The position numbers and the translations under genes are program-made. A stretch of DNA of 63,883 nucleotides, the filler included, from Olpidium bornovanus S191 (Eukaryota > Fungi > Olpidiomycota): assembly GCA_017911155.1 (NCBI GenBank). It is 32 parts of 32 records of this genome, joined end to end, with 100 filler letters (N's around TTAATTAATTAA, not from the genome) between each part and the next. Parts side by side here need not be neighbours in the genome. Positions count along the whole stretch, not along the records: positions 46,585 to 49,047 come from JAEFCI010011963.1; 31 more parts are not named here. One strand, given 5' to 3'. This document shows positions 46,485 to 49,147 of this stretch, piece after piece (within the stretch, counting starts at the first letter, position 1; each line of letters opens with the position of its first letter). The notes beneath the pieces are model-generated. The model did not search any database, was not told the origin of the DNA, and saw only the letters and a list, made by a program, of their open reading frames with translations.

Positions 46485-46586
46485 NNNNNNNNNNNNNNNN
46501 NNNNNNNNNNNNNNNNNNNNNNNNNNNNTTAATTAATTAANNNNNNNNNNNNNNNNNNNNNNNNNNNNNNNNNNNNNNNNNNNNCG

Positions 46587-46710
46587 GACACAGATGACAC
46601 CTATGTCGTTGAGCGAATTCTTTCACATCGCATACGGGACTCCGGCATAGAATACCTTGTTCACTGGAAAGGCTTCCCCGCCAGACTCCGCGCACAACTG
46701 GATTCCCCCC
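46587..46710 (+). other. Chromodomain, split by a 1-nt frameshift
   Basis: TYVVERILSHRIRDSGIEYLVHWKGFP, continuing in the shifted frame as PDSAHNWIPP; the shift falls in the C4 run at 46676-46679. Confidence 0.85.
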
Positions 46711-46785
46711 ATTCCCCCATCCCCCGACCCCAATTTCTCCCGTCCTCCGCCGACCCTTTTTCCCCACTCCCACTTCGCCGCCCGT

Positions 46786-48956
46786 ATGTACGCGTCGCCG
46801 GACTTTCGTCTTGTTGCCCGCAACACGGGCGCGGGTTCCTTCGGTTTTTTCGGTTCTTTCGCCCCCGCGCCGCCGCCGCCGCCGCCGCCGCCGCCTCCCG
46901 TCGCCTCCCCGGTGGCCGCGTTGCACTCCTGGTGGATATGCGCTCCTGCTCTCCCGGAGGGCGGCGCGCTGCCGTATTTTCCCGCCGGGCCGGCGACACT
47001 CGGCGGCGCCGGCGACCGGGCGGACGACCGCTGCTGGGGCTATTGGTGCGCCGCCTCGGCCCCGCCCGTGTTCGACGCTGCCCTCTTTGCGAGGGCCGCT
47101 CTCGCGGAGCCCTCGGAGCCGCAGCGGCCAAAGCGCCGCCGAACCGTGAAACCGAAACCGGCCGCGCCGCCGCCGCCGCCGCCGCCGGCACCGCAGATTG
47201 AGAGGGGACGACAGGGCGCCCGCGGCGCCTCGCCGGAACGCGCCGCCGCCGCCTGCTCCGCGGACTGCTGCCGCTCCTCCTCGGAGCAGAGCCCGCGGTG
47301 GACGAACAGCGGCCGGCGGACGGCCAGACCGCGGGCGCCGACGGAGACCGAAACGGCTCCTGGTCACGCCGCCGCCGCCGGCCCGCACTGCGCGAGCGCC
47401 ACGGGGCCCCGAGGTGGCGCGGCAGCGGTCGGCGGCACGCGCCTTCCGGCCGTCGCTGGCGGGACTGAAGACGACCGTCCGCTTGTTACGCGGAGCCTGC
47501 GCGGGCCGCAGGGCACGCCCGACGCGGGAGCCTTCGCGGCGGAGGACCTCAGGGAGAACAGCGGCGCCGGATCCGCCGGTGGGACTACGCCTGGTCAGGC
47601 AGACTCCGCGAGCGAAGCCCCGCGGGCAGCAGCGGCCGGCGCGACAGACGGTGTGGATTTGGCGCCGGGCGCCGGAACCCGTGCAGCCCAAGCAGCTGGC
47701 GCACCGGCCGAAGCAGCTTTGCCGCTTGGAGTGGAACAACCTGTTCCGAAGGCGAACGGAAAACGGAAAAGGCGGCGGACCATTACCACCAGCAATATAC
47801 CCGACGCTCCCACCGCCGTCGAGGTGGCCGCAAGCTCCCTTTCGGACGCCGCTGCGGCGGCCCGCCCTTCCCCGGCCCTCTCCGAGCGCGAAGTCTTTCC
47901 GGACGACGGCGGCCCGCAGGGTGACACCGACGGTTGCCCTACGGCCGAGGAAGGTTCGCCTAAGTCACCGCCCAAGGCGAAAAAATACCGGAAGTCGAGG
48001 CGCTGGACGCTTGAGGAGACGATGGCTCTTGTTCAAGCGTGCAAGAAGGTCAGCTTGCTTTAACTGTTGCCGTTAGCATTGGTGGAGCTCGGAGCGCGTG
48101 TCTGACCTAGAAAGGTTCCGCACCAGTAGCGCTAAGAGCTTTGGGCTGACCAGATAATCTCCGTTCCCCTATCCTGCAGCACGGCGTCGGCGCCTGGAGA
48201 TTGATGCTCCAAGACCCCGTGTTCAAAGGCCGGCTGCGCGGGCGGACCGCCACCAACCTCAAAGATCGATTCCGCTTCTGCTTTCCGGAAGAGCTCAGGC
48301 GCCTTTACCCTAACGAAGTTGCGCCAGCGCCAAATCACACCGATGACGCCGAGGACTCGACGCCGCAGCACCGGGGTTGCCGCACAACGTTCGCCCCCGC
48401 CACGCTCGGCGTGGACGACCTTGTCTTTTCGCGGAAAAAACGCCGCCGCAACCGGCCGTTCACGCCCCAGGAGGACGAGGCCATCCTCCGCGGCGTGCGT
48501 TTCCACGGTCCGGGAGAATGGACCGCCATTTGTCAGGACGAGGAACTCGGCCTTGGCCACCGCCTCGCGACCGACCTGCGCGACAGGTTCAGGACGGCCT
48601 ACCCGACCGAGTACGAGGCAATGGGGTACGCGCTGAAGGCGCCCAGGAGGCGCGCGGCGACGGAAGGCCTGGAGATAGGCGGCGGAAGACGGGAGGGTCC
48701 TCTTCCTCCAAATGAAGGCGGCGGAGCTGACGGGGGCAGTCCTAGCGCCGACGGCGACCAAGGGGGCGGGTACCCCGTCGACGCGCCCGTGACCTTCCAC
48801 GCGGCGTTTGGCGATCTCGACCAAGAAGAGACGTACGGCGGCGGATCGGACCGCGGCGCGTTCGCGGGCACTTTCCTTGACGACGATCAACTCTACGGCG
48901 CTCTGGAATACGGCCACTTCGGTCACAGCATGACCGCATTCCCCTCCACGGGCTAG
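46786..48956 (+). CDS. TAY1: Teb1/Tay1-like telomeric-repeat-binding protein with two Myb (telobox) domains
   Basis: Intron 48049-48179. RRWTLEETMALVQACKK/HGVGAWRLML..RTATNLKDRFR and RPFTPQEDEAILRGVRFHG..LGLGHRLATDLRDRFRTAYP. The start may lie upstream (see chromodomain). Confidence 0.9.
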
Positions 48957-49147
48957 GAGCGCTTCGACCGTGGCGATCTTTCTTTCTTCTTTCCTTTAGT
49001 GATTACAGAATTTTCCGCGCGCTTTGGTGGTCGGGCGGACCTCGAAANNNNNNNNNNNNNNNNNNNNNNNNNNNNNNNNNNNNNNNNNNNNTTAATTAAT
49101 TAANNNNNNNNNNNNNNNNNNNNNNNNNNNNNNNNNNNNNNNNNNNN

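What the first reader, a model, noticed from the sequence alone, without database searches (positions are those of the whole stretch)
46585..48956. Possible chromodomain-Teb1/Tay1 fusion: a methyl-lysine reader joined to a telomere-repeat binder
Seen: a chromodomain with all three aromatic cage residues (Y, W, F) lies directly upstream of the Teb1-like gene. Its second half (PDSAHNWIPP) is already in the Teb1 frame with no stop. Removing one C from the CCCC at 46676-46679 gives one continuous chromo-linker-Myb-Myb protein, and homopolymer errors are plausible in this assembly. Known: Teb1/Tay1/TRF proteins have no chromodomain, and chromoviral integrases end in similar domains. Inference: either a new heterochromatin-telomere adaptor (possibly a domesticated chromovirus domain) or a dead retroelement tail next to the promoter.
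Basis: partly seen in the sequence, partly recalled or inferred. Interest (0 to 1): 0.75.

Follow-up and report, generated by a model that had tools for sequence, protein, structure and literature searches.

The report
Tay1 telomere-protein gene beside chromodomain relic
This short contig carries an ordinary, expressed fungal Tay1/Teb1-type telomere-repeat-binding gene, and the chromodomain just upstream is a truncated, frame-shifted fragment that most likely is not part of that protein, so the proposed new chromatin-telomere fusion is probably not real.

Summary
A Pfam Chromo match (E 1.9e-9) with all three aromatic cage residues sits at the contig's 5' edge. It lies one base out of frame with a downstream two-Myb gene. 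That gene is a clear Tay1/Teb1 family member: 47% identity to Yarrowia Tay1 across both Myb motifs, E 4e-45. It has one 131-nt intron, confirmed by spliced RNA contigs.

The fusion reading is poorly supported:
- The chromodomain covers only profile positions 1-34 of 53. The C-terminal helix is absent in every frame.
- The "second half" adds only 1.8 bits to the match.
- No intron can repair the frame.
- GC3 of the chromodomain half is 52%, against 76-77% in the gene (p 0.004).
- RNA contigs begin at 46715, just past the fragment. The first AUG after that point is 46786, the only in-frame ATG before the Myb region.
- RNA contigs show no indel in 29 homopolymer runs, so there is no sign of homopolymer errors where this could be checked.
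- None of the 150 nearest family representatives carries a chromodomain.

The C4 run itself and the upstream DNA could not be examined. Best reading: a decayed chromodomain remnant, perhaps a chromovirus integrase tail, next to the Tay1 promoter. Interest is low.

The parts
46587..46679 (+). First part of a chromodomain (beta strands 1-2, aromatic cage Y/W/F), in frame 3 of the piece, running off the contig's 5' edge
   Evidence: Pfam Chromo 37.7 bits, E 1.9e-9, profile 1-27/53. Aligns to HP1/Swi6 chromodomains. GC3 is 16/31, or 52%.
46676..46679 (+). CCCC run where the chromodomain reading frame breaks (one base too many for continuity)
   Evidence: Read directly from the sequence. Not covered by any RNA contig or read laid.
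46681..46713 (+). Short continuation of the chromodomain (PDSAHNWIPP) in the frame of the downstream ORF. Homology ends here and the C-terminal helix is missing.
   Evidence: Joined with X at the break, the Chromo match extends only to profile 34/53 and gains 1.8 bits. Translations of all three frames show no helix-like continuation. The piece alone has no Pfam hit.
46700..46785 (+). Pyrimidine-rich tract (79% C+T) holding the start of the RNA evidence (46715); likely core promoter and 5' UTR of the Tay1-like gene
   Evidence: Pyrimidine fraction. X1 RNA contig starts at 46715. No ATG between 46604 and 46785. TCCCCCCA repeat at 46704-46725.
46786..48048 (+). Exon 1 of the Tay1-like gene: ATG, about 400 aa of GC-rich, non-conserved, low-complexity sequence, then the first half of Myb motif 1
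   Evidence: 46786 is the only in-frame ATG before the Myb region. Only the last ~35 residues match relatives. Covered by RNA contigs.
48049..48179 (+). Intron, 131 nt, GT..AG
   Evidence: Skipped in RNA contigs of runs X1 and X4, which come from two studies. The Tay1 alignment runs unbroken across the junction.
48180..48956 (+). Exon 2: rest of Myb motif 1, linker, Myb motif 2, C-terminal tail, stop TAG
   Evidence: Pfam Myb_DNA-binding E 2.4e-8. Best solved matches are plant telomere-repeat-binding proteins. 47% identity to TAY1_YARLI.
48957..49029 (+). 3' UTR as far as the RNA contigs reach
   Evidence: X1 contig ends at 49029 and X4 contig at 49018.

Best explanation
The piece holds one ordinary gene of the fungal Tay1/Teb1 family. 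These proteins carry two consecutive TRF-like Myb motifs that bind TTAGGG-type repeats. The gene is expressed, has one intron, and its protein most likely starts at ATG 46786 (679 aa). Directly upstream, at the very edge of the contig, lies about two thirds of a chromodomain. It is broken by a one-base frame shift and lacks its C-terminal helix. I read this fragment as a decayed leftover of some chromodomain-bearing sequence. The likeliest donor is the C-terminal tail of a Ty3/gypsy 'chromovirus' integrase. It sits next to the Tay1 promoter and 5' UTR and is not translated as part of Tay1. Shown here: the domain identities, the intron, the frame break, the truncation, the codon-usage contrast, the reach of the RNA contigs, and the lack of the architecture in relatives. 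Inferred: the transcription start near 46715, the non-coding status of the fragment, and its retroelement origin.
For: 1. Tay1 membership. The spliced protein aligns to Yarrowia Tay1 (P0016, named) at 47% identity over 178 aa, E 4e-45, across both Myb motifs and the exon junction. The exhaustive search gave 673 relatives.
2. Truncation. The Chromo profile is matched only at positions 1-34 of 53 even when read through with X. No helix-like continuation exists in any frame.
3. Frame. The break is at 46676-46679. There is no GT between 46660 and 46741, so no intron can mend it. The one conceivable GT..AG pair (46742/46958) is out of phase and lies inside an unspliced RNA contig.
4. Codon usage. 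GC3 is 52% in the fragment against 76-77% in both exons, Fisher p 0.004.
5. RNA. In the best run the gene body has depth 20.7 and 46715-46855 has depth 6.2, while nothing is laid on 46585-46714. The first AUG after 46715 is 46786, which opens the long ORF.
6. Assembly quality. There are 0 indels in 29 homopolymer runs of 4 or more checked against two RNA assemblies.
7. Relatives. None of the 150 best cluster representatives has Pfam Chromo. phmmer with the fragment against them scores at most 3.9 bits. Six-frame translations of the flanks of five relatives' genes show no chromodomain.
8. Literature. [quoted passage not shown] Eight telomere-protein papers on Tay1/Teb1 found by the search never mention a chromodomain.
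Against: - The fragment's continuation lies in the same frame as the Tay1 ORF with no stop between. I estimate about 1 chance in 5 of this under the relic reading.
- The C4 run was not covered by any read or contig, so an assembly error there is not excluded.
- A hole in Logan contigs does not prove absence of transcript, and coverage was already falling toward the 5' end.
- No integrase, polypurine tract or LTR is visible. The DNA after the fragment is pyrimidine-rich and the gene starts 75 nt later, so the retroelement origin is unproven.
- The acidic patch followed by YVVE..L.HR resembles HP1/Swi6 at least as much as it resembles integrase tails.
- There is no RIP-like signature, though the stretch is too short for that test.
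Confidence: 0.72

Rival explanations
1. True fusion: the gene encodes an N-terminal chromodomain, a long disordered linker and two Tay1-type Myb motifs. The extra C would be an assembly error or a strain-specific lesion, and the start codon would lie upstream of the contig.
For: Same strand, same frame after a one-base correction, and no stop for 36 codons up to ATG 46786. All three cage residues are present. The acidic patch before YVVE resembles the N-terminus of HP1/Swi6. The C4 run is unverified.
Against: - The C-terminal helix of the domain is missing in all frames.
- GC3 is 52% against 76-77% in the gene.
- RNA contigs stop at 46715.
- There are 0 indels in 29 checked homopolymers.
- None of 150 family representatives has a chromodomain, and no chromodomain lies upstream in five relatives' loci.
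Confidence: 0.06
2. Assembly artefact at the contig end: the first ~128 bases come from a repeated element and were attached through k-mer overlap in the C-rich tract. On this reading, the adjacency of the chromodomain and Tay1 is not genomic at all.
For: The contig ends inside the fragment. Chromodomain homology ends at about 46712 and RNA support begins at 46715. A length of about 128 nt matches common assembler k-mer overlaps (inference). An 8-nt C-rich repeat lies at 46704-46725.
Against: There is no direct evidence of repetition. An exact 29-nt pattern from the fragment had 0 hits in metagenome contigs, and a word search found no similar protein. Assemblers normally end contigs at repeats without making chimeras.
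Confidence: 0.1
3. The fragment belongs to a longer 5' UTR or an alternative upstream-initiated transcript of the Tay1 gene. It would be transcribed but not translated into Tay1, with the upstream ATGs at 46594 and 46603 acting as a short uORF ending at TAG 46648.
For: RNA depth falls from 20.7 to 6.2 toward the 5' end, so a weakly covered extension could be missed. uORF-like ATGs are present.
Against: No RNA record covers 46585-46714. The word share of X1 (0.82) is about what I estimate from the covered segments alone.
Confidence: 0.1

Closest known systems
Tay1 (Yarrowia lipolytica, TAY1_YARLI) / Teb1 (S. pombe) / UmTay1 family of fungal double-Myb TTAGGG-binding proteins
   Same: Two consecutive TRF-like Myb motifs with the family's invariant W/E/G/W/F/R/KD/R pattern. 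47% identity to Tay1 over 178 aa. Fungus-specific family as described in PMC7952879.
   Different: About 400 aa of GC-rich, non-conserved, low-complexity N-terminus before the Myb pair; in Yarrowia Tay1 the pair starts near residue 150. Such long N-termini also occur in other family members of 600-800 aa. DNA-binding specificity was not tested.
Chromovirus (Ty3/gypsy) integrase C-terminal chromodomain
   Same: A chromodomain with the three aromatic residues, lying at the 3' side of whatever is upstream and in the same orientation. Codon usage differs from the neighbouring host gene. Its position at a contig break fits a repeat (inference).
   Different: No integrase core, polypurine tract or LTR can be seen. 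The domain is truncated after beta strand 3 and frame-shifted. Copy number is unknown.
HP1/Swi6 chromodomain
   Same: Best solved-structure matches are CBX1, HP1a and Swi6. An acidic patch precedes YVVE, and the cage residues are conserved.
   Different: No C-terminal helix, no hinge and no chromo shadow domain. The space downstream is occupied by the Tay1 gene.

Membership tests
Tay1/Teb1 family | Two consecutive TRF-like Myb motifs | tested here: met
   The spliced protein aligns to Tay1 residues 154-309 across both motifs. Pfam Myb E 2.4e-8 for motif 2. The second motif also matches the first motif of Tay1.
Tay1/Teb1 family | Significant sequence similarity to a characterised member | tested here: met
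   TAY1_YARLI (P0016) is among the top ten of 673 hits, E 3e-29 with exon 2 alone, and E 4e-45 with the spliced protein.
Tay1/Teb1 family | Fungal origin (Ascomycota/Basidiomycota) | tested here: inconclusive
   The organism name is coded. One short GT..AG intron and relatives' loci with HET and DUF3425 genes point to fungi, but the taxon was not determined.
Tay1/Teb1 family | Binds TTAGGG-type duplex repeats | not testable with these tools
   Only indirect: the best solved matches are plant telomere-repeat-binding Myb domains.
Chromodomain (Pfam PF00385) | Profile score above the curated cut-off | tested here: met
   37.7 bits (39.5 when joined with X) against a 25.1-bit cut-off.
Chromodomain (Pfam PF00385) | Aromatic cage (three residues) | tested here: met
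   Y in YVVE and W and F in WKGF align to the cage positions of HP1-beta and HP1a.
Chromodomain (Pfam PF00385) | Complete fold: three strands plus C-terminal helix, in one open frame | tested here: not met
   Profile positions 35-53 are unmatched. No helix-like sequence in any frame. One-base frame break at 46676-46679.
Chromovirus integrase tail | Integrase core / pol upstream of the chromodomain | not testable with these tools
   The contig begins at 46585. Attempts to fetch upstream DNA failed.
Chromovirus integrase tail | Polypurine tract and 3' LTR downstream | tested here: not met
   46700-46785 is 79% pyrimidine on this strand, and the Tay1 ATG follows at 46786.
HP1/Swi6 | Chromo shadow domain downstream of the chromodomain | tested here: not met
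   No such Pfam hit in any piece. The downstream sequence is the Tay1 gene.
Chromo + double-Myb fusion (proposed new architecture) | Architecture present in relatives | tested here: not met
   0 of 150 nearest representatives have Chromo. phmmer scores at most 3.9 bits. Nothing in the flanks of five loci.
Chromo + double-Myb fusion (proposed new architecture) | One transcript spanning both domains | tested here: inconclusive
   RNA contigs reach only to 46715. A hole in contigs proves nothing, and the raw RNA runs gave no reads.

The most novel reading that the evidence does not exclude
Organism A has a lineage-specific Tay1 protein with an N-terminal methyl-lysine-reading chromodomain, possibly captured from a chromovirus, that would link H3K9me-type heterochromatin to TTAGGG repeats. 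The extra C would then be an assembly error, and the domain would work without a canonical C-terminal helix.
Probability: 0.05. Interest if true: 0.65.

Novelty: not a real feature. Interest (0 to 1): 0.15.

Why it matters
A real chromodomain-Tay1 fusion would be a new direct link between heterochromatin marks and telomere-repeat binding, and an example of a retroelement domain put to host use. The evidence instead points to an ordinary Tay1-family gene with a dead chromodomain fragment beside its promoter. The value of this result is to keep a tempting but unsupported fusion out of the list of novelties. It also gives a checked gene model (start, intron, stop, expression) for a Tay1 homologue in a GC-rich fungus.

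Tried and rejected
- **Fetching upstream DNA or close orthologues.** The genome-contig scan was blank; that collection is bacterial and archaeal. An exact look-up of the two ORF products found nothing on record. A 29-nt chromodomain pattern had 0 hits in metagenome contigs. A protein-based scan of metagenome contigs found no relative.
- **Word searches.** The exon 1 ORF gave no hit, probably because low-complexity words swamped the search. The chromodomain stretch (region 1-40 of the frame-3 ORF) shared words with one candidate only, and it did not score. An HP1-versus-chromovirus assignment by nearest relatives was therefore not possible.
- **Chromodomain tree.** Not attempted. 34 residues and no referenced chromoviral sequences would give no resolution.
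- **ESM Atlas look-alikes of the fragment.** Only generic short chromodomain clusters came back.
- **Raw RNA runs X21 and X18.** They carry the same species label but gave 0 reads on the piece, so they are no test.
- **Intron-based repair of the frame.** Rejected. No GT lies between 46660 and 46741, and the only GT..AG pair is out of phase and inside an unspliced RNA contig.
- **RIP indices.** No RIP-like signal, but the stretch is too short to count.
- **Rfam.** No RNA family on either strand. NCBIfam gave nothing relevant.
- **Minus-strand ORFs.** Rejected as by-products of 70-79% GC, because the plus-strand gene is confirmed by splicing and homology.

Full report
**What is in the piece**

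The usable sequence is 46585-49047 (2463 bases). It is GC-rich, 59% at the 5' end and up to 79% in the middle.

- Frame 3 of the piece (46587-46679) translates to a 31-residue peptide ending in ...EYLVHWKGFP.
- The frame of 46585 is open from 46651 to 48048.
- After a GT..AG interval the reading continues from 48180 to a TAG at 48954-48956.

**The downstream gene is a Tay1/Teb1 family member, and the gene model is sound**

- Exon 2 carries a Pfam Myb_DNA-binding match (E 2.4e-8). Its best solved relatives are plant telomere-repeat-binding Myb domains.
- The exhaustive profile-free search found 673 relatives. The best are 44-52% identical over the Myb pair.
- One of the top ten, P0016, is Yarrowia lipolytica Tay1 (TAY1_YARLI, 'telomere-associated protein 1').
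- I spliced exon 1 (from ATG 46786) to exon 2 in a script. This gives 679 residues that align to Tay1 at 47% identity over 178 residues, E 4e-45. The alignment runs without a break across the exon junction (...ACKK|HGVGAW...).
- RNA-derived contigs from two runs of different studies (X1, X4) skip exactly 131 bases with GT..AG ends. The intron (48049-48179) and expression are therefore confirmed.
- Those contigs reach 49029, giving a short 3' UTR.
- Only the last ~35 residues of exon 1 resemble relatives. The preceding ~400 residues are lineage-specific, low-complexity sequence. Many family members are 600-800 residues long, with the Myb pair starting well inside the protein.
- The family is described as fungus-specific, with two consecutive TRF-like Myb motifs that bind TTAGGG repeats (PMC7952879).

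**The chromodomain is real but incomplete**

- The 31-residue peptide scores 37.7 bits against Pfam Chromo (cut-off 25.1, E 1.9e-9), but only over profile positions 1-27 of 53.
- It aligns to HP1-beta, HP1a and Swi6 up to WKGF, with the three cage residues conserved.
Removing one base of CCCC 46676-46679 joins WKGF to P-PDSAHNWIPP in the frame of the Tay1 ORF.
- I read the break through with X, using a 54-letter string typed. The Chromo score rose only to 39.5 bits and the match reached profile position 34 of 53.
- The last 19 positions, which form the C-terminal helix that packs on the sheet, are unmatched. No frame after 46713 encodes anything helix-like; all three frames are proline-rich.
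- The continuation alone has no Pfam hit.
- What is present is therefore two thirds of a chromodomain, frame-shifted.

**Can the frame be rescued?**

- Splicing cannot do it. There is no GT between 46660 and 46741.
- The single conceivable pair (GT 46742, AG 46958) is out of phase with the Tay1 frame. It also lies inside RNA contig 46715-46855, which is unspliced.
- An assembly error at C4 remains possible, because no contig or read covered 46585-46714.
- However, across the 2.1 kb that two independent RNA assemblies did cover there are 29 homopolymer runs of four or more. None shows an insertion or deletion; there are only five substitutions.
- The premise that this assembly is prone to homopolymer errors therefore has no support where it could be tested.

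**Does the fragment belong to the gene?**

Several independent lines say probably not.

1. *Codon usage.* GC3 is 16/31 (52%) in the fragment against 320/421 and 198/258 (76-77%) in the two exons. Fisher p is 0.004.
2. *RNA.* In the best run the gene body has depth 20.7, and 46715-46855 has depth 6.2. Nothing lies on 46585-46714. X1's word share of 0.82 is about what I estimate from the covered segments alone.
   - The contig starts at 46715, two bases after chromodomain homology ends.
   - It lies within a 79% pyrimidine tract (46700-46785). From general knowledge, such tracts are common around transcription starts of filamentous-fungal genes.
   - The first ATG after 46715 is 46786. It is also the only in-frame ATG upstream of the Myb region. 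This gives a coherent model: a 71-nt leader, then the ORF.
3. *Relatives.*
   - None of the 150 best cluster representatives has a Pfam Chromo hit at E 0.01 or below.
   - phmmer with the fragment against all 157 fetched homologues scores at most 3.9 bits.
   - Six-frame translations of the loci of five relatives (L001-L008) hold no chromodomain. Their upstream neighbours differ: M1 peptidase, MBOAT, SURF4.
   - Eight telomere-protein papers on Tay1/Teb1 found by the text search contain the word chromodomain zero times.

**What the fragment is**

- The space downstream is taken by the Tay1 gene. The fragment can therefore only be the N-terminus of that gene or the C-terminal end of something upstream.
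- A contig that ends inside the fragment is what a repeat would cause. This is an inference.
- I could not show integrase upstream, because the contig ends there.
- There is no polypurine tract or LTR downstream.
- The acidic patch plus YVVE..L.HR resembles HP1/Swi6 as much as it resembles integrase tails.
- The donor therefore remains open. A chimeric contig end is a minor rival.

**Weighing**

- For the fusion: same strand, same frame after a one-base correction, and no intervening stop. By my estimate this has about a one-in-five chance under the relic reading, given the C/T-rich composition.
- Against the fusion: it needs an unverified assembly error, a domain that works without its helix, foreign codon usage, a transcript not seen in the best RNA run, and an architecture absent from all sampled relatives.
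- I put a functional fusion at about 5%, and the relic-beside-promoter reading at about 0.7. The remainder goes to a contig-end artefact or a longer untranslated leader.

**Limits**

- The two raw RNA runs gave no reads and are no test.
- The organism's name is coded.
- Nothing here resembled human sequence.

Noticed in passing
window 46860-46909 and 47161-47187: Two (CCG/GCC)n trinucleotide arrays of about 12 and 9 copies encode poly-proline runs in the N-terminal region. The RNA contigs break at both, and the lay tool flagged them as skipped repeats. They are candidates for length polymorphism between strains.
   Followed up: partly
window 47367, 47372, 47720, 48377, 48394: The same five substitutions relative to the window appear in RNA contigs of two different studies (X1, X4). 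Two are synonymous and three change residues (A>G, L>S, A>D). The window's strain therefore differs from the commonly sequenced one. None falls in a Myb motif core.
   Followed up: partly
window 46594-46650: Two ATGs (46594, 46603) in the frame of the Tay1 ORF open an 18-codon reading frame ending at TAG 46648, overlapping the chromodomain fragment in another frame. This would act as a uORF only if transcripts start upstream of the contig.
   Followed up: no
window 46704-46725: An 8-nt C-rich unit (TCCCCCCA, 2.8 copies) lies exactly where chromodomain homology ends and RNA coverage begins. It could mark a deletion or recombination junction, or be part of a CT-rich core promoter.
   Followed up: no
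runs X18, X21: Two large raw RNA-seq runs labelled with the same species as the best holders gave zero reads on a gene that has depth 20 in another run's contigs. Possible causes are that only 6% of each run was read, a different strain or organism, or very different expression.
   Followed up: no
L001, L006, L007 (relatives' loci): The genes flanking Tay1 homologues differ in every relative examined (M1 peptidase/proteasome alpha; MBOAT/HET; SURF4). There is no conserved synteny around this gene at 45-50% identity.
   Followed up: partly
window 46786-47990: About 400 residues of 70-79% GC, Ala/Pro/Gly/Arg-rich sequence precede the Myb pair and match nothing in 157 homologues. They include Cys/Trp-containing patches (SWWICAPALP, CWGYWCAAS) that look less disordered than the rest and might be a lineage-specific module.
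   Followed up: no
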